64,000 bases of DNA from positions 70,976 to 134,975 of the forward strand of contig JAAOMT010000752.1 of NCBI GenBank assembly GCA_016748015.1. Reading direction: 5' to 3'. The position numbers were made by a program, and so were the translations under genes. Shown piece by piece: positions 21,350-32,992 of this stretch. The DNA is from Geosiphon pyriformis uo1. Its lineage: Eukaryota; Fungi; Glomeromycota. Under the pieces are notes generated by a model. It was given only the letters and a program-made list of their open reading frames with translations. It did not search any database and was not told where the DNA came from. Positions within the stretch are counted from its first letter, which is position 1; every line of letters begins with the position of its first letter.

Positions 21350-23185
21350 ATGCCCCAAGAACCAAAACCAAAAAAGAAACGAGTTCCTATTACCGCGCTT
21401 ACCAAGCGCGAAATATGCCTCAAAAAACGCGAGAACGCGAAACTCCGAGATGAAGACCTTGCTCGCCAGTACGGTCTTGACAGGAGTACCATCACAAAAA
21501 TCCTCAAAAATCGCGACAAATGGTTAGCAATCGACCCAAATTCTAATAACGCGAAGCAAAAGACTCAAAAGTCTCCAAAATTTCCACAAATAGAGGAATC
21601 GTTAGCTAGTTGGTTAAATATGGTTCTTGGGGAAGGTGCAACCGTCAGCGACACCCAATTACAGGAGAAAGCTTTGGAAATTGCTCAGACGTACGGAATT
21701 AGAAACGAATTTCAAGCGTCTAATGGGTGGATAACAAAGTTTAAATCTCGTCACCAATTTCGTGGTGGCGAAAGTCCAGGAGCTGGAGAAGTTTCGTTGC
21801 ATGTCAATCAACAACCGACCATTCCTGGTACCTCCGTGTTGTCGCCTGCCGAACACCCCACTTATGTGAATTCGGTAAGCTGGATATGCAACATGATATC
21901 ACGCATATTTTAATTTTAAATAATTTGTGTCACAATTTTTATACTTCACGTATTTTTTGGGTTTTTGCTTTGGTAACTTCAAATGGATTAAAACCCCGAA
22001 ATCAAACAAAAGTTTCCAACCACCTATACTCAACCTTCACCCAATAGAGTAAATTCAACAAATACACTTTCTCTTGGTCAAGGTACACCTTCCCCTTCTT
22101 TCATTCAATATGGATCTTCAAATTCAACTCCTATGGGACCTTTTTATTCTGCTCCCCGAATATACCCTATCTCAAACACCATTGCTCCTAGTATATCTCT
22201 TGATAACACGGCGTAAGCTTTTTTAATTTCTAGGAATCGTCCTAATTTCTTGCATCGAACGTGGTTAATACTGAGCTTCACTTTATAGGTTTATATTTTG
22301 CGACTATCAAAATGATGTTATTGGAATGTAGGTTAATTGTCAATAAATATTCAAAGGACTATGTAAAAAAATTTATTATTTTTGCTGAATTTTTTTTACC
22401 ACAGGGTTCAGAACAGCCAAACTCTTAATCTCTTTCTGACGCGCTCACGATCCCTTTTTCGTGCAGTTCATCAAGCAAAACAGAAAAGAAGCATTACTTG
22501 TATTTCTGTTTGTGGCTCCGTGAGTAAATAAGAAAATATCAAAACATCAAGCCATTTTGGTTTAATATAATTTTGAAAGTTTATTGAATTTTTATTTGAT
22601 TTAGTTTCGACCTGGTTATCCCGAGGTCTCACCACATAATCCAAGTTTCTCATTAATAAAATCATATGAACGCCTGATTGAAGGGACAAAAGGTGTGGAA
22701 TTTATTGACGGATTGGTTCCATCAGAGTCAGAGGTAAAGCTTTAATCATGAAAGATCAACTACATCGTCTATAATGGATATATGATAACCACATATATTT
22801 TATTTCGCAAATACAATTAGCATGATATTATAATTAAGGTAAGCTCTAATTTTTAATTTTGGATAACGCATTTCAATTAAATTTACCTATCTCGCTTCTT
22901 TCTCTAAAGAAACGTCGTGTCGACGCTTTTTTCAACACGGATCTCAAAATGATTCTTGAATCTCGTAATATAAAACATATCGTCCTTTCGGGCATTTCAA
23001 CTGGAGGGGTAATATTATCAACTTCACTTTCTGCATGCGATATGGATTTTAGAATTACCGTCGTAAGAGAGTGCTGCTTTGATGGAAGTGAGAACGTACA
23101 AAATATGCTGATGGATGAAATATTTCCGAAACAGGGCATCACGGTGACAAACGTTGATAATTTAATGGGGGAGTTGAGACTTTGA
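21350..23185 (+). CDS. Predicted 433-aa fusion: CENP-B N-terminal HTH + Tc5/CENP-B HTH DNA-binding domains, S/P/T-rich linker, isochorismatase-like hydrolase domain (7 exons)
   Basis: Exons 21350-21874, 22013-22212, 22289-22327, 22405-22519, 22605-22733, 22821-22838 and 22910-23185 are all GT-AG, phase-compatible, and total 1302 nt with no internal stop. The N-terminus has LARQYGLDRSTITKILK and FQASNGWITKFKSRH. The C-terminus has TAFIFCDYQND, FRPGYPEV, KRRVDAF and SGISTGGVILST...DMDFRITVVRECCFD. Each domain is secure; their joining depends on the AAG acceptor at 22010-22012. Confidence 0.75.
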
Positions 23186-23556: not shown

Positions 23557-23590
<34 letters not shown>

Positions 23591-23612
23591 CCATCACCAT
23601 CACCATCATCAT
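23556..23612. repeat. (ATC)n/(ACCATC)n microsatellite
   Basis: Directly visible. Confidence 0.95.
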
Positions 23613-24539
23613 CCCCCTTATAAGTGACATTCTAAGAGCAAAAGAATTGTATAAAATGAAACAAAAGAAACCAAAATTTCAAAGCTTTCTTTTTTGCATG
23701 GTTACCCAACGCTTTATTTATTTCAGTTAGATATTTTATTAAAATGTGACACCAACACACCATCTTTCATAACCATATGGCCTTTTCCCAACTGAGAATT
23801 TTGGGGGACTTTCAATAAAGACCAATTTCGAAGTTTGATTAAACACCAAACATCGAGACAAATTGCGATTCAGTCATCATACGAGGCCACCAAGATTATT
23901 TTTTAAATGAAATTGGATCTCAGCAAATGATTAATTGCAATCACCACGAAATTGTGTTAATGTCGTCGAATGGCTAGATCCGAAAATATGGGTGAATTAT
24001 TTTCTATTTGGATTAACCCAATTAAGGAATAGACATTAATTAATGCTAAATTTGATATGAACATGATGGGTTGGGATTTCTTATATTGTTACTTCTTTAC
24101 AAGGCCACAAAAACTTGGCTGTCTGGAATAATTTCAATTATTTTGTCCAAAAAGTTTGTATTGTGTTCTGTGTCAAACTAAAAACTTGAAGAATTTAGTT
24201 GCTAGGAATTTTGATTAGAAGTCCAACTCTTAAGATCCTTTAAATATATCCGAAGAAAGGTGTAGGAGATGATAAACTTCAATTTCTTGTATTTTGTATT
24301 CCAAAAAGTAGGAGAGGTGAGAGGTTTTATCATACTGCATTTTATTTTCTTGGCCTATCTATAGGCACTTGAACGGAATTTGAAAAGGATGTGATATTGC
24401 AACTTTTATTTGAATGTGACATTGGGCAAACGACAATATAATTGAATCCGCATCTTCTTCGAAAGATCCTAATAAATATTTGATGGCTATTAACAAGTTG
24501 GTAATAATACGGTCAAAATGAATAATAAATAAGAATCAA

Positions 24540-26730
24540 TCATTGCTCATCTTCAAGATCTTTGAGCTTTCCAGATTGAATGGCTTGTTCCAGAGGATTG
24601 AGAACAGAGATCACTCCAGTTTTGTTGAGACGCTCAAACAATACAAAAAGCTTTTCTGCCTCTCTTTCTTTCTCCTCCTCAGTCATGTCAGCAAGTGGGG
24701 GTGGTTCCTCATGGTAATACTGACCAGTTATAGGGTTAATGACTTGACCAGAACAAACTCGAGAATTACCAACGCTCTTGGGAGGAATCAAGATATTTTT
24801 TTTCATGAGATATCCTGCAGCATTTCCATAACCCACATGGTATATTAATAGTTGAGCTTTAAAATGAAATAAATTAATTATTCAGGAGAATAAGTATTTA
24901 TTAAAAATCGGGAAATCTTTTATTACAACTATGAAACTTACCATCTTCGTCGCACAGGATATACAACAATTCACTAACACTGTCTCGCAGATTTGGATAC
25001 ATAACTGAGGTTAATAATCGAATAAGCCGGGCGTTCAAAGTTTGACCTTTTACTAAGGGCTTCGAACGGTCTCTAAAATGAAAAAGATTTCATAAAATAC
25101 ATCTGCAAGGCAGAGCTTTTTCAAATAGCATTCAATTGTCAAGGGCTTACATATTATCAGGGAGCAATCTTGATCGCAATTTTAATTTGACAGTTCCGTC
25201 TTCAGCCAATTTTTTTAAAAGAGCTGCCAGTGGAGTAATTACCTCATCGAAATCAACGCTTTTGTTTGACTCAGGTTCAGGAACCTCATCAGACTCACTT
25301 TTGTCGGCAAGGTAAATCATAGAGTCTAACGTTTCAATCAGAAAATCGAGAAGAATATATTGTTCATCATTTTTTTCAGGAGGAAACCACATTGATTTGT
25401 ATGGTTCGACCGGGAAATTTAGAAGAGCATGGATAGCGTGAGAGTGAGGCGGTGCTAGTGGTAAAGGAGAAGGCGGTGGAATATGCGTGATAATTCGTAA
25501 TACTGGTTCTAGTAACCTAAAGAAATTTTCAATGAATGATTAGTTACAGTCTTCTTAATTTGTGGAAATTTTCAATTATAGAAAACAATTATCTAGTGGA
25601 ATACGTTTCAAACTTGAAGTCAAGGTCTAAATTTTTTCCCATCTCCTCAAGGCTTAGTTGCGAATCATACAACATTAAGTTAAACAATAGTTTCAATTGC
25701 TCACTTAAAATCATTTTTCGAGAGAACGGAGAGGGAGGGTCTAAGCTTGAACCTGGCGAAGACAATTCTTTAACATGAGTAGATATATTCTTCAGATGAA
25801 GTGAAACAGATTAAAATGCATTAAAGTTTTTTTCGAAAGAATGGTTTCTTTACTATTTAAAATTTTAAAATTTGATGCGTACCTTGGCTAAAATATCTAT
25901 GATATTGTATTGATTGATTAATTGTTGAACGGTATAACTAGGCCGAACAGTCATAAGAAAAAGAATGCGTGAAAAAAGAAATTGGGACTTCAAAGAGAGA
26001 TTGTCCCGCTGATGACCAGAAAGAGAATTAGTTGAGCTTATTCCACAAGAATAGCGAAGATTTAATCGAAATTTACTAAAATACTTGAAGTTGATATGTT
26101 GAGGTCGCAACACCTTTGTACTTTTCGAACAAATCACGAGTTTCGTCTTTTAACAAAAGAGCATTGGCAATGCAGGTTAACGCTTCCTGCGAGACGGTCG
26201 TATCAATTAGAGCCTCAGAGTCCTCGAGAAGCTGAGCATGGGTCAAAAGAACACAAAATCCCTATATTTGTGGTTCATTGATATGAGTACATAGCTAGTA
26301 AAAACAATTTAAAATGTTCAATTTAAAATTATAAACCTTATCAGCAAAAATATTATCAGAACCATTGGGGTCACGGCCCAAAGTTTTTAGTGTTTGCAGA
26401 GCCAATAAACGCGCTAATACAGGATAGAAAGTGTTAAAAAAAGCTTAAGCGATGTAATTTGCTGCAAGCTTACCTTCACTATTCCAGCCCTTTTGAACAC
26501 CGTTCTTATCAAGGTCTCCAAGGAGATAATTCACCAATTCCGATTTCTCTGAGAGAGCAAGTGCAGAAATGCCTATTTGAGGGAACGGGAAAGGGGAGTT
26601 TAATACAATTTGGGTGAAATATCCATGAGGTTGGAGGTAAAGTACCTTTGGGGTCAGCTAAGAAACTAGTCAGCAGGTTAAAGACAACTTGAGGGTCAGA
26701 TCTATCAGCTGTGGAGAGATACGCGTTCAT
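24540..26730 (-). CDS. RIC8: Ric8/synembryn, G-alpha guanine nucleotide exchange factor/chaperone (multi-exon)
   Basis: The last exon has the family signature GYGNAAGYL...INPITGQ...MTEEEKEREAEKLFVLFERLNKTGVI. Upstream exons read LQTLKTLGRDP, QEALTCIANALL, FLFSRILFLMT and QLKLLFNLM. The start MNAYLST at 26730 is inferred. Confidence 0.92.
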
Positions 26731-27531
26731 GACCAAAGCGGTAGAAGACTTGCTGGGAGGTAAGGATTTTCCTGGAAACTCGATACTTGTGGTTTTTAGT
26801 AAATTGATGTACAATCCCACAATGATAATCATTTGTGCAATACATGTATTTAACAATCACTTACAAATAGTCATAAATTTCAATTGGCTGTTACCAACTT
26901 TCTTTAGAACTTCTGCCCACTTTCTTTTCAAGCGAATAGCTGATAGCAACCACTAGATTCTATAGAATCTTAGACAAAGCGAACGTTAGGTACTATTACT
27001 GTCAGACCTCATTTATTAAAAAGCTCACCCAATCTAGAACCTATTAAATATAATATACTTTTCTCCCGCTTATTTTAACCTTGGGTCCGCTTGTAAATTT
27101 GGGAATTTGTAAATTACTTTGCAGTTATTCAACGGCATCCAAAAAGTATGTACTTTATACCTTCTTGCTATTGAAATAAAGATGGTTTCTTACTTCAGTG
27201 CAAAAGTACACGATGTTGATTTGAGAATTGAGTTTTCACTCTGCCCGGAGACTTTTAAGGCTTTCCTTTTCTTTGATCTTTCGTTCCCTTACCAATTTCT
27301 TCTTTATATTCTTATTCTCTCTCAGTATGAGTTTGCATAGATCTCAATCCAATTAAATTGAATATTTGCCAAAAAAGATGGGATGGGGCATCACGGCATT
27401 TTTATGGTGATCCATGAGTGCTTGTCATCTTTAATCAAGCTAACCATTAAAATATCATTCCAATCGTATCTATTTAGATATCTAGTTTTAAATTCATTAT
27501 TGAAGTCAAACAGTAGGACTTTATAGGATCA
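26731..27531. promoter_or_regulatory. Divergent intergenic/promoter region shared by RIC8 and the CPSF6-like gene
   Basis: Head-to-head start codons ~800 bp apart. No specific sites were identified. Confidence 0.5.
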
Positions 27532-31150: not shown

Positions 31151-32992
31151 TCAAGTCATAACCGGAGGGCTGCTGGCGTAGTTTGTGGAACAAGGGGAAC
31201 CTTGGTAGAAACAATAGCGATCGACTAATTCATAATAAGATGATGAGCCGATCGCTGGTTTTGTTGAGCTTGGAATTGCGATTGGAGTCGATCGCCGGGT
31301 CACTTCAAAGTTTGATTTAGTTTTAAACTGCTTGGGGGAATCATTTATCCATGAAGCCGTTGGGTCAACGGTAGATGGCATACCATCAATATATTCACCA
31401 AAGAAGGCGTTGAAACCCTCCGTGTTGTTGGCAAGCGAGTATGGACGAATGTGATGATTAACATGTGTTTGTGGCGGGTTTAGGGCAATTGGGTGAGGTC
31501 GGGGGCTTGGGGTTGTTGTTGATGATGATGATGATGATGGAACTAATGAAGTTGGTTTGATCATAGCCGCAGATAGTGAATCCTTAATGTCATATCTTGA
31601 CGAAATCATTTTCTGTTGAGTACTTCCAGGGACGAGTGTGAGGGCTGATGAAGCGGGGGACAAAGGGGAGCGACAGATTTCATCAGATCGTTGTTTTGAA
31701 ATTTTGGTAGAGTTTTGATTGGAGGGCCATTTGGAAAAAGATTTTATCGATTTTGATCGGCTTGACGGTGACGTTTGCTTAGTAAGACGTTTAAAGTTGA
31801 CCTGATAATTTGAGGCGTTGTTGTTGTCCCACAATTCTCGATTGTCAACCATGTAACAAACAGCGAAGAACATGGTTTGTCCGTTGATAGGATTTCTCGA
31901 GTTATCGATCAATCCGATATTAAATTCAAACACGTCAAAAGTATTATTCTTGCGATCTTGAGCATCTTCTGAATACGAAGCGGTGACCTCAGAAACCGAA
32001 GACCAAAAATCAAAAGTATATCTGACGATAACCGTCTTTTGAAATGCAATATTTTGAACTTGAATGCGACCTTGTAGTTTACGTTGGTCTTTGGACAAAA
32101 ATATTGATTCCACAAGGACAGGCTTCGAACTGTGAAGTGTTGTAATTCTAGGGAAATTTGGAAGTGTAATGACGAGTTCACCTTCGTAATCGTCGTCATC
32201 ATCAGATTCTGAGGATGTTTCTTCATCGGAATCCTCTTCTTCAGAAGAAACGTCACAACTAACAGCCAATGGTTTTTCGGCTTCCAAGAAAAATCGAACA
32301 TGTTCTAAATCGGTATCGAAATGCACGAATTTTGGACATGTCGGCGTCGTTGGCTCTGATTTTGATGCTCCTTGCTTGAGGGAAGGTCTTACCACTTCGC
32401 CACTTTTCTTCCTTAAGATACAAAGTCTGGTTAACGGAGTTACCAATGGTGGCAAATCTTTGAGATTAAGACGTCGCTGTAGAGCCTCAGGCGAAGACTT
32501 ACGTCTTGGTGAGGTTGAGAATTGAGGTGAAGTTGAAAGAATATCTTTAACTTCTTGAAGAGCCTGGGTTCTTTGAGATGGCGTCATATCTACTGGGTGT
32601 GACTTTTTCTCCATATTCACAGGATTTGAACGTGGTGAGGAGGAGGGTGATAGGGGAGGGGTTGGTATCAAGACTGCTTTTGTGGGGGAAGAACCGAAAA
32701 CGTTAATAACTGACTTCATTAAGCTGTCGTTGCTGATGGTTGGTCTCTTGGAGGAACCAAAGGTGATTTTGGTTAATGGCCAACCTGGTCGAGAAATAGG
32801 ACTAGGAGTAGGTTTTTTGGTTACGATAGCTGTGGCTTTTAATGATTCTGGGTTTATTGTGGTCTTAATAGTAGTAGTAATAGTAGTAGTAGTAGGAGTA
32901 GTAGTGGTAGTGGTGGCCGTTGAACACGATTCTGGAATCGTTGTAATTTTGTCGGGGTTTGTTGTTTTTATTACTGGAGGAGAATATGGCAT
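31151..32992 (-). CDS. Protein phosphatase 1 glycogen-targeting regulatory subunit (CBM21; Gac1/Gip2/PPP1R3-like), 613 aa
   Basis: Intact single-exon ORF. RVxF-type motif KFVHF. CBM21 motifs GRIQVQNIAFQKTVIVRYTFDFW and WDNNNASNY. Confidence 0.93.
   Translation of the reverse strand: MPYSPPVIKTTNPDKITTIPESCSTATTTTTTPTTTTITTTIKTTINPESLKATAIVTKKPTPSPISRPGWPLTKITFGSSKRPTISNDSLMKSVINVFGSSPTKAVLIPTPPLSPSSSPRSNPVNMEKKSHPVDMTPSQRTQALQEVKDILSTSPQFSTSPRRKSSPEALQRRLNLKDLPPLVTPLTRLCILRKKSGEVVRPSLKQGASKSEPTTPTCPKFVHFDTDLEHVRFFLEAEKPLAVSCDVSSEEEDSDEETSSESDDDDDYEGELVITLPNFPRITTLHSSKPVLVESIFLSKDQRKLQGRIQVQNIAFQKTVIVRYTFDFWSSVSEVTASYSEDAQDRKNNTFDVFEFNIGLIDNSRNPINGQTMFFAVCYMVDNRELWDNNNASNYQVNFKRLTKQTSPSSRSKSIKSFSKWPSNQNSTKISKQRSDEICRSPLSPASSALTLVPGSTQQKMISSRYDIKDSLSAAMIKPTSLVPSSSSSSTTTPSPRPHPIALNPPQTHVNHHIRPYSLANNTEGFNAFFGEYIDGMPSTVDPTASWINDSPKQFKTKSNFEVTRRSTPIAIPSSTKPAIGSSSYYELVDRYCFYQGSPCSTNYASSPPVMT

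What the first reader, a model, noticed from the sequence alone, without database searches (positions are those of the whole stretch)
21350..23185. Transposase-derived CENP-B/Tc5 DNA-binding module fused to an isochorismatase-fold domain: candidate one-component metabolite-sensing regulator
Seen: the tandem CENP-B-type HTH ORF has a strong phase-0 donor (TCG|GTAAGC, 21874/5). It joins in frame to a 200-nt S/P/T-rich exon that runs into the first strand of an isochorismatase-like domain (NTA|FIFCDYQND), and five more exons complete a 433-aa protein. There is no DDE domain, no visible TIRs, no C->T decay, and CpGs are retained, unlike every TE in the window. Known: CENP-B, fission-yeast Abp1/Cbh and yeast Pdc2 are domesticated pogo/Tc5 transposases, and the isochorismatase superfamily (nicotinamidase, YcaC, RutB, EntB/PhzD) binds small molecules. 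Inference: a domesticated DNA-binding module has replaced its transposase core with a small-molecule-binding fold, giving a ligand-responsive transcription factor or a chromatin-targeted enzyme. I do not know of a characterised protein with this architecture, but I could not search.
Basis: partly seen in the sequence, partly recalled or inferred. Interest (0 to 1): 0.85.

Follow-up and report, generated by a model that had tools for sequence, protein, structure and literature searches.

The report
Mycorrhizal-fungus DNA-binder fused to isochorismatase-like domain
This is a real single-copy gene, conserved in every arbuscular mycorrhizal fungus lineage sampled, that joins a transposase-derived CENP-B-type DNA-binding module to an isochorismatase-fold domain lacking the usual catalytic cysteine; it is probably a dimeric DNA-binding regulator, is already in databases under generic names, and has not been studied.

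Summary
Seven GT-AG exons (21350-23185, +) add up to 433 codons. Exon 1 encodes CENP-B_N + HTH_Tnp_Tc5 and the last exon matches Isochorismatase.

The fusion is genuine. The exons tile colinearly on full-length orthologues from Paraglomus, Ambispora, Diversispora, Acaulospora, Gigasporaceae, Glomeraceae and Entrophospora. In Gigaspora margarita, two independent assembled contigs are exact copies of the genomic locus with all six introns removed, so one mRNA spans both domains. I obtained no RNA data for this genome itself.

The DNA-binding module is the most constrained part: 86% mean identity across the group, dN/dS about 0.04. The linker is S/P/T-rich and predicted disordered.

The isochorismatase domain keeps the catalytic Asp and Lys, but the nucleophile Cys position is Val. 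The same is true of all its nearest stand-alone relatives (bacteria, Calcarisporiella, Basidiobolus), so this is an uncharacterised Cys-less subfamily, not a decayed enzyme. A homodimer is predicted (0.61 against 0.05 for the best control).

The ligand-sensing regulator reading is plausible but untested. A parallel fusion (transposase-derived WRKY-GCM1 domain + isochorismatase, same sensor idea) was described in 2006 (PMC1702500). The scan holds no earlier finding on this gene. Verdict: new variant of a known kind, moderate interest.

The parts
21350..21874 (+). Exon 1 (175 codons): start codon, basic N-terminal arm (KPKKKR), the bipartite CENP-B-type DNA-binding module, and the start of the linker
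   Evidence: Pfam; 1HLV match; 91% identical to Ambispora exon 1; donor GTAAGC
21371..21529 (+). First helix-turn-helix (CENP-B_N / psq-like), residues 8-60
   Evidence: PF04218 E=4.8e-4, just under the curated cut-off; covered by the 1HLV alignment
21581..21763 (+). Second helix-turn-helix (HTH_Tnp_Tc5), residues 78-138
   Evidence: PF03221 E=2.2e-16
21875..22012 (+). Intron 1 (138 nt, phase 0), the junction that makes the fusion; an in-frame stop at 21911-21913 would end the protein if the intron were retained
   Evidence: The equivalent phase-0 intron is removed in two Gigaspora spliced contigs. It sits at the same place in Ambispora and Rhizophagus.
22013..22212 (+). Exon 2 (200 nt): S/P/T/N-rich linker, running up to the first strand of the isochorismatase fold
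   Evidence: Aligns to orthologue linkers; dN/dS about 0.27; the orthologue linker has pLDDT about 26
22289..22327 (+). Exon 3 (39 nt): first beta-strand and the catalytic-Asp motif FIFCDYQND
   Evidence: the Asp is invariant in 119 family members
22405..22519 (+). Exon 4 (115 nt): helix 1 and strand 2 of the isochorismatase fold
22605..22733 (+). Exon 5 (129 nt): subfamily motif FRPGYPEVS ... GTKG.EF
22821..22838 (+). Exon 6, an 18-nt micro-exon (HDIIIK)
   Evidence: Aligns to DIVIK of the orthologues. The equivalent short segment is present in the Gigaspora spliced contigs between two BLAST blocks.
22910..23185 (+). Exon 7: catalytic-Lys motif KRRVDAF, GISTGGVILST (Val at the nucleophile-Cys position), CCFD, and the stop codon
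   Evidence: PF00857 E=4.6e-16; alignments

Best explanation
Shown. A single-copy, seven-exon host gene encodes a 433-residue protein in three parts:
1. An N-terminal bipartite CENP-B-type helix-turn-helix DNA-binding module of pogo/Tc5 ancestry.
2. A poorly conserved S/P/T-rich linker of about 100 residues, predicted disordered.
3. A C-terminal isochorismatase-fold domain from a Cys-less subfamily.
The gene is found in every sampled order of arbuscular mycorrhizal fungi. In Gigaspora it is transcribed as one spliced mRNA.

Inferred. The protein acts in the nucleus as a sequence-specific DNA-binding regulator. The isochorismatase-like domain forms a homodimer, so two DNA-binding modules are presented together, much as the C-terminal dimerisation domain does in CENP-B. 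The pocket of that domain keeps the Asp, the Lys and nearly all residues invariant in the subfamily. It probably binds, and may turn over, a small molecule that modulates DNA binding or recruitment of partners. That would make the protein a eukaryotic one-component-style regulator. The ligand and the DNA target are unknown.
For: Gene model and domains.

Fusion is real:
- The exons tile colinearly on 8 full-length orthologues.
- 18 hits, nearly all carrying PF03221 + PF00857, come from Gigaspora, Dentiscutata, Racocetra, Cetraspora, Rhizophagus, Glomus, Funneliformis, Diversispora, Acaulospora, Ambispora, Paraglomus and Entrophospora.
- Two contigs from different sequencing runs (L014, L017) are 99-100% identical to the Gigaspora margarita locus L016 with six introns precisely removed.
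- A 441-aa fusion protein comes from a plant (Anthurium) transcriptome and nests among the Glomeraceae.

Constraint:
- Mean pairwise identity is 0.86 for the DNA-binding module, 0.56 for the linker and 0.71 for the isochorismatase domain.
- Against Ambispora, dN/dS is 0.045/1.18 for the DNA-binding module, 0.27/0.98 for the linker and 0.12/>2 for the isochorismatase exons.

Host gene, not transposon: single copy, CpG retained, RIC8 neighbour shared with Ambispora.

Fold and pocket:
- AlphaFold model of the isochorismatase domain has pLDDT 95.6; Foldseek TM is about 0.8 to 3kl2, BiuH and YecD.
- The residues invariant in the subfamily are retained: D244, R293, Y296, P297, E298, K341, R343, G368, T371, D384, D386, D398 (P0160 numbering).

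Dimer: homodimer score 0.61 against a best control of 0.05. The three runs agree in 100% of contacts and partner pLDDT is at least 91. The mark was reached by 21 of 30 solved homodimers and 0 of 23 solved monomers.

Precedent for the sensor idea: PMC1702500.
Against: - There is no direct evidence of DNA binding, nuclear location, ligand binding or regulation.
- No RNA data were obtained for this genome.
- The dimer prediction may reflect memory of solved isochorismatase-family oligomers (caveat stated).
- Retention of Asp and Lys fits an active enzyme as well as a sensor.
- Several positions conserved in stand-alone relatives are changed in all fusions (H404 to Q, Y387 to F/L/M, S372/G373, R278 to Q). 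This could mean an altered or lost pocket function.
- CENP-B-type proteins are often architectural or heterochromatin factors, not ligand-gated regulators.
Confidence: 0.5

Rival explanations
1. DNA-tethered enzyme. The isochorismatase-like domain is catalytically active by a Cys-independent mechanism, as in the vinyl-ether hydrolases EntB and PhzD, which use an Asp general acid. The HTH module merely targets that activity to particular chromosomal sites.
For: The Asp of DYQND, the Lys of KRR.DAF and about 20 subfamily-invariant residues are all retained in the fusions. The isochorismatase exons have dN/dS of about 0.06 or less. The whole subfamily, including free-standing bacterial members, natively has Val at the Cys position yet is strongly conserved, as expected of an enzyme.
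Against: - No substrate is known for any member, and there is no solved or curated member.
- Bacterial gene neighbourhoods give no pathway.
- Fusion-specific replacement of a His conserved in 89% of stand-alone members (H404 to Q), and of other conserved positions, hints at a changed function.
- No obvious chromatin-borne substrate exists for this fold.
Confidence: 0.22
2. Pure scaffold. The C-terminal domain is a pseudoenzyme used only for oligomerisation. The protein is an architectural, heterochromatin or transposon-taming factor like CENP-B or the fission-yeast Abp1/Cbh proteins, with no ligand control.
For: - The predicted homodimer interface includes many of the conserved and the fusion-specific residues (343-345, 372-373, 380-388, 400-411).
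- CENP-B needs a C-terminal dimerisation domain (established knowledge).
- The genome carries at least 130 pogo-type HTH copies that such a factor could recognise.
Against: Pocket residues away from the interface (D244, R293/Y296/E298 and K341) are invariant across all compared full-length orthologues. That is more conservation than a scaffold needs. The module is only 25-36% identical to the resident transposon copies.
Confidence: 0.2
3. Two adjacent genes wrongly joined: an HTH-only protein ending at the stop in intron 1 (21913), and a separate isochorismatase-like gene starting at the ATG at 22133.
For: - The in-frame ATG at 22133 exists.
- 197-aa HTH-only ORFs reading into the intron occur on short metagenome contigs (P0001).
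- Intron 1 (138 nt) is longer than the others (71-87 nt).
Against: - Spliced contigs from two runs join the domains in Gigaspora, as does a transcriptome-derived protein (P0158).
- The linker exon stays in frame and colinear in all orthologues.
- The phase-0 intron position is shared.
- P0001 is what a prokaryote-style ORF caller yields on unspliced DNA.
Confidence: 0.03

Closest known systems
CENP-B and other pogo/Tigger-derived host proteins (human CENP-B; S. pombe Abp1/Cbh1/Cbh2; S. cerevisiae Pdc2; TIGD proteins)
   Same: The same bipartite N-terminal DNA-binding module (CENP-B_N + HTH_Tnp_Tc5; 1HLV E=1.4e-15). It is a single-copy host gene under purifying selection. A C-terminal part is predicted to dimerise.
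   Different: There is no relic DDE_1 transposase domain. The C-terminal half is an unrelated isochorismatase-fold domain. It is not orthologous to any of these proteins and is restricted to arbuscular mycorrhizal fungi in my searches.
WRKY-GCM1 (MULE transposase-derived) DNA-binding domain fused to an isochorismatase domain in filamentous fungi (Babu, Iyer, Balaji and Aravind 2006, PMC1702500)
   Same: A transposase-derived DNA-binding domain joined to an isochorismatase domain in a single-copy fungal gene. The authors proposed the same idea, that the catalytic domain serves as a small-molecule sensor.
   Different: The DNA-binding fold differs (zinc-chelating WRKY-GCM1 versus helix-turn-helix), as do the transposon superfamily and the fungal group. 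I could not test whether the isochorismatase domains belong to the same Cys-less subfamily.
Cys-less isochorismatase-like proteins: E. coli YecD (1J2R), Burkholderia BTH_II2229 (3TXY), and the uncharacterised stand-alone clade found here (bacterial metagenome proteins, Calcarisporiella, Basidiobolus, Galdieria)
   Same: The same fold. The catalytic Asp and Lys are present and the nucleophile Cys is replaced (Val here, Gly in YecD). The stand-alone clade is 37-49% identical and shares the motifs DYQND, FRPGYPEVS and GI.T.GVVLST.
   Different: Those proteins are free-standing, 185-240 aa, and some carry signal peptides. None has a DNA-binding domain. YecD itself scores far below the equivalog cut-off (62 against 195 bits). 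No function is known for any of them.
Cysteine-hydrolase members of the superfamily (nicotinamidase PncA/Pnc1, N-carbamoylsarcosine amidase, RutB, BiuH, YcaC)
   Same: Fold: Foldseek TM is 0.7-0.8. The Asp and Lys of the triad are present.
   Different: The nucleophile Cys is absent in this gene and in all orthologues, so the thioester mechanism of these enzymes is impossible.

Membership tests
pogo/Tc5 (Tigger-like) DNA transposon | DDE_1 (DD35D) transposase catalytic domain | tested here: not met
   Pfam finds only the HTH domains and Isochorismatase in the exons and in the full-length orthologues. The 138-nt intron 1 leaves no room for a DDE domain.
pogo/Tc5 (Tigger-like) DNA transposon | Terminal inverted repeats and multiple copies | tested here: not met
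   Only AT-rich chance inverted repeats are present. The nearest genomic paralogue is 35-36% identical.
CENP-B-type domesticated DNA-binding proteins | Bipartite CENP-B_N + HTH_Tnp_Tc5 DNA-binding module | tested here: met
   PF03221 E=2.2e-16. PF04218 E=4.8e-4, at 20.2 bits against a cut-off of 21.2. 1HLV E=1.4e-15 over residues 10-135.
CENP-B-type domesticated DNA-binding proteins | Host gene under purifying selection at a stable locus | tested here: met
   dN/dS is about 0.04 for the DNA-binding module. RIC8 lies downstream in both the window and Ambispora. 100 of 137 module columns are invariant across 7 orthologues.
CENP-B-type domesticated DNA-binding proteins | Sequence-specific DNA binding | not testable with these tools
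   Needs EMSA, DAP-seq or a protein-binding microarray.
Isochorismatase superfamily (PF00857) | Isochorismatase alpha/beta fold | tested here: met
   PF00857 E=4.6e-16 on exon 7 and E=2.6e-29 on orthologue P0002. AlphaFold pLDDT 95.6 and Foldseek TM about 0.8 to 3kl2.
Isochorismatase superfamily, cysteine hydrolases (nicotinamidase, CSHase, RutB, BiuH, YcaC) | Asp-Lys-Cys catalytic triad | tested here: not met
   The Asp (DYQND) and the Lys (KRR.DAF) are present. The Cys position is Val in the window, in all orthologues and in about 95% of the stand-alone relatives.
True isochorismatases (EntB, PhzD, VibB) | Closest sequence kinship and isochorismate-binding residues | tested here: inconclusive
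   PhzD and EntB rank only 27th or lower, at E=3e-16 to 2.5e-13 with the family profile, behind 3kl2, BiuH and YecD. Substrate-contact residues were not compared.
One-component-style ligand-responsive transcription factor | A DNA-binding domain and a small-molecule-binding domain in one polypeptide | tested here: inconclusive
   Both domains are in one protein and one mRNA. Ligand binding and allostery were not testable.
WRKY-GCM1 + isochorismatase fungal fusion (PMC1702500) | WRKY-GCM1 zinc-finger DNA-binding domain | tested here: not met
   The DNA-binding domain here is helix-turn-helix. The resemblance is of architecture only.

The most novel reading that the evidence does not exclude
The protein is a transcription factor specific to arbuscular mycorrhizal fungi. 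Its Cys-less isochorismatase-like domain senses a host- or symbiosis-related small molecule, for example a chorismate-derived or other root metabolite, and so couples plant chemistry directly to fungal gene expression. The same sensor fold would then have been recruited independently by two different transposase-derived DNA-binding domains in fungi.
Probability: 0.12. Interest if true: 0.85.

Novelty: new variant of a known kind. Interest (0 to 1): 0.55.

Why it matters
Arbuscular mycorrhizal fungi are obligate plant symbionts that cannot be handled genetically, and few of their regulators are understood. This is a single-copy candidate regulator present in all their sampled lineages and, in my searches, nowhere else. 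Its DNA-binding module is almost frozen in sequence, and it carries a possible small-molecule pocket.

It is directly testable in vitro, using DAP-seq on the recombinant DNA-binding module and ligand screens on the C-terminal domain.

It is also a clean example of a transposase-type DNA-binding module combined with an enzyme fold. It draws attention to a widespread isochorismatase-like subfamily that lacks the catalytic cysteine, has no known function, and is routinely mislabelled 'cysteine hydrolase'.

Tried and rejected
Exons were searched by reference, and full-length orthologues served as proxies.
I used an alignment of database orthologues only (A6).
- Full-length AlphaFold with 12 orthologues gave a poor model (mean pLDDT 51). 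It is useful only for the disordered linker and a moderately confident DNA-binding module.
- Fusions outside arbuscular mycorrhizal fungi: none turned up. None of the other roughly 148 best HTH representatives out of 1.84 billion proteins carries the isochorismatase domain. Word-seeded searches with the full protein and with the domain region found only the orthologues. This is absence within those searches, not proof.
- Gene neighbourhoods of three bacterial stand-alone relatives: no shared context and no pathway clue. One is near a MarR + MFS pair; the others sit among unannotated genes.
- NCBIfam and PDB: no member of the subfamily.
- ESM Atlas: only generic fungal isochorismatase clusters.
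- Literature: no paper on this fusion. The 'phzD' report in Glomus (PMC3768803) concerns bacterial endosymbiont genes, not this gene.
- Nicotinamidase or Pnc1-like local control of sirtuins: rejected, because the nucleophile Cys is absent.
- Active or decaying transposon: rejected (no DDE domain, no terminal inverted repeats, single copy, CpG retained).
Full report
**1. The observation**

The window is very AT-rich (17-38% G+C). It belongs to a 128-Mb, 792-contig fungal assembly.

There are seven exons with canonical GT-AG borders: 21350-21874, 22013-22212, 22289-22327, 22405-22519, 22605-22733, 22821-22838 and 22910-23185. They total 1302 nt, that is 433 codons plus a stop.

Exon 1 carries HTH_Tnp_Tc5 (E=2.2e-16) and a borderline CENP-B_N match (E=4.8e-4). 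Exon 7 carries the C-terminal half of the Isochorismatase domain (E=4.6e-16). Exon 1 aligns with the solved DNA-binding domain of human CENP-B (1HLV) over residues 10-135 at E=1.4e-15.

Every search used exons by reference or orthologous database proteins.

**2. Is the fusion real?**

*Orthologues.* A full HMMER scan of 1.84 billion representatives with exon 1 gave three close hits (74-75% identity). After that, identity falls to 44% or less. One close hit, P0002 (467 aa), has both domains.

Searching with it returned 18 proteins, nearly all carrying PF03221 + PF00857. They come from Gigaspora, Dentiscutata, Racocetra, Cetraspora, Rhizophagus, Glomus cerebriforme, Funneliformis, Diversispora, Acaulospora, Ambispora, two Paraglomus species and Entrophospora. 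One more comes from an Anthurium plant transcriptome; it nests among the Glomeraceae in the domain tree, so it is most likely a transcript of a root-colonising fungus.

*Colinearity.* The seven exon translations tile without overlap on eight full-length orthologues. The exon 1/exon 2 junction falls where Ambispora reads ...YVNL/FPTTYP.... Ambispora leptoticha is closest: 91% identity in exon 1 and 81% in exon 7. I did not verify that name.

*Transcripts.* Two assembled contigs from different sequencing runs (L014 from SRR6249698, L017 from SRR9002095) are 99-100% identical to the Gigaspora margarita genomic locus L016, in six blocks. All introns are missing, including the 170-nt intron between the HTH exon and the linker exon. 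Such molecules can only be spliced RNA, so in Gigaspora one mRNA spans both domains. That the runs are RNA libraries is my inference from the intron-less structure.

*Intron position.* The phase-0 position of intron 1 is shared by Ambispora (after residue 174), Rhizophagus (178), Gigaspora (178) and the window (175).

I put the two-gene alternative at about 3%.

**3. Host gene, not transposon**

- The genome holds at least 133 matches to the HTH module. Apart from the gene itself, the best is 35-36% identical and most carry stop codons.
- Exon 7 has no second match in the genome. Only one other locus matches the Isochorismatase family at all.
- No DDE domain is present. No meaningful terminal inverted repeats bracket the gene.
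- CpG observed/expected is 1.25 in exon 1 and 1.46 in exon 7. In the HTH regions of ten transposon copies it is 0.09-0.92.
- A Ric8 gene lies convergently downstream in the window (E=1.3e-36) and also at the Ambispora locus.

*Selection against Ambispora:*

| Region | dN | dS |
|---|---|---|
| DNA-binding module (codons 1-140) | 0.045 | 1.18 |
| Linker exon | 0.27 | 0.98 |
| Isochorismatase exons 5 + 7 | 0.12 | >2 (saturated) |

*Conservation across seven full-length orthologues spanning the group:*

| Region | Mean pairwise identity | Invariant columns |
|---|---|---|
| DNA-binding module | 0.86 | 100 of 137 |
| Linker | 0.56 | 13 of 96 |
| Isochorismatase domain | 0.71 | 90 of 197 |

The DNA-binding module is thus the most constrained part.

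**4. The C-terminal domain**

The Asp of the superfamily triad (FIFCDYQND) and the Lys (K-RR-DAF) are present. The nucleophile Cys position is Val (GISTGGVILST) in the window and in every orthologue.

This is not a decay that followed fusion. A profile of the domain found 668 stand-alone proteins. The nearest are 37-49% identical: Calcarisporiella thermophila, Basidiobolus ranarum, Galdieria, and many bacterial metagenome proteins of 185-240 aa, some with signal peptides. They share the motifs DYQND, FRPGYPEVS and GI.TSGVVLST, with Val at the same place.

A quick maximum-likelihood tree puts the fusion domains in one clade (SH-aLRT 99). That clade is sister to Calcarisporiella (83), then Basidiobolus and Galdieria, with the bacteria outside. 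This favours recruitment of a pre-existing fungal gene. The supports are moderate, the branches are long, and the careful tree search did not finish.

No solved structure or curated NCBIfam model belongs to the subfamily. The best matches are 3kl2, BiuH and E. coli YecD, all far below equivalog cut-offs.

With the 119-sequence alignment AlphaFold gives a confident model (pLDDT 95.6). It has the expected fold (TM about 0.8 to 3kl2, BiuH and YecD).

Nearly all subfamily-invariant residues are kept in the fusions. A few positions conserved in stand-alone members are replaced in all fusions: His404 to Gln, Tyr387 to Phe/Leu/Met, Ser372/Gly373, Arg278 to Gln, Asp400 to Ser/Asn.

**5. Dimer and linker**

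A homodimer of the Ambispora domain is predicted with a score of 0.61, against a best control of 0.05. The three runs agree in 100% of their contacts and partner pLDDT is at least 91. The tool's mark was reached by 21 of 30 solved homodimers and 0 of 23 solved monomers. The stated caveat is that a family with solved oligomers may score from memory. The interface includes residues 343-345, 372-373, 380-388 and 400-411, which overlaps several of the fusion-specific changes.

The full-length model is poor overall. It shows a helical DNA-binding module (pLDDT 71-87) and a linker at pLDDT of about 26, consistent with disorder.

**6. Mechanism**

*Shown:* one mRNA and one protein with a DNA-binding module, a linker and an isochorismatase-like domain, under strong purifying selection and found throughout the arbuscular mycorrhizal fungi sampled.

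*Inferred:* a nuclear, dimeric, sequence-specific DNA-binding protein. Its C-terminal domain supplies dimerisation and probably a small-molecule site that tunes activity.

*Rivals:*
- A DNA-tethered Cys-independent hydrolase.
- A ligand-free scaffold acting like CENP-B or Abp1 on repeats.

I cannot separate these three readings computationally. I give them roughly 0.5, 0.22 and 0.2.

**7. Comparison with what is known**

The DNA-binding module places the protein among CENP-B-type domesticated pogo derivatives, but it lacks their relic DDE domain. The nearest non-orthologous relatives are mostly other fungal 'HTH CENPB-type' proteins without DDE, for example one from Mycena. One 288-aa fragment does have a DDE_1 start and a strikingly similar N-terminus. 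The immediate donor, transposon or already domesticated gene, therefore remains open.

The C-terminal domain is a superfamily member but fails the cysteine-hydrolase test.

The closest published parallel is the fusion of a MULE-derived WRKY-GCM1 domain to an isochorismatase domain in filamentous fungi. For that fusion the same sensor hypothesis was proposed in 2006 (PMC1702500).

The orthologues are deposited under automatic names: 'Isochorismatase hydrolase', 'cysteine hydrolase', 'HTH CENPB-type domain-containing protein' and 'Tigger transposable element-derived protein 2'. My literature searches found no study of them.

**8. Verdict**

This is a new variant of a known kind: a transposase-type DNA-binding domain joined to an isochorismatase-like putative sensor.

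Its main appeal is that it is a conserved, lineage-restricted candidate regulator of arbuscular mycorrhizal fungi, and a handle on an unstudied Cys-less isochorismatase subfamily. Interest: 0.55.

Noticed in passing
window 21770-21874 (last 34 codons of exon 1) compared with L015:4560-4661: Synonymous divergence from Ambispora collapses here: pS is 0.12, against 0.59 in the first 140 codons. The DNA is nearly identical between the two Archaeosporales-type genomes but not with Gigaspora or Rhizophagus. This could be a splicing or regulatory element at the fusion junction, or chance in a small sample.
   Followed up: partly
window 23557-23615: A (CAT)n/(CAC) trinucleotide microsatellite lies about 370 nt downstream of the stop codon, in the 3' UTR or intergenic space before the convergent Ric8 gene.
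   Followed up: no
window 24540-26900 (- strand): A multi-exon Ric8/synembryn gene lies convergent to the fusion gene (PF10165 E=1.3e-36 on its last exon). Ric8 is also downstream at the Ambispora locus L015, with one extra gene between.
   Followed up: partly
proteins P0186, P0192, P0174 (stand-alone relatives): Many bacterial members of the Cys-less subfamily (the 240-aa forms) and the Calcarisporiella protein carry N-terminal hydrophobic, signal-like segments, so part of this family is probably exported. NCBI names them 'isochorismatase family cysteine hydrolase' although the cysteine is absent.
   Followed up: partly
G000 genome-wide; loci L002-L012: At least 133 pogo/Tc5-type HTH matches are scattered over the genome. 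Most have in-frame stops, CpG depletion (observed/expected 0.09-0.92) and TpG/CpA excess, consistent with methylation-driven C-to-T decay of transposon copies.
   Followed up: partly
proteins P0003 (Racocetra fulgida, 239 aa), P0162, P0163, P0167: Several deposited orthologue models are truncated or skip exons. P0003, for example, jumps from the middle of the HTH to the FRPGYPEVS exon, and the Entrophospora model lacks the HTH. Automated annotation thus often hides the fusion.
   Followed up: no
window 31151-32992 (- strand): A long uninterrupted 613-aa ORF with S/T/P-rich low-complexity ends lies in a G+C-richer block. It was not analysed.
   Followed up: no
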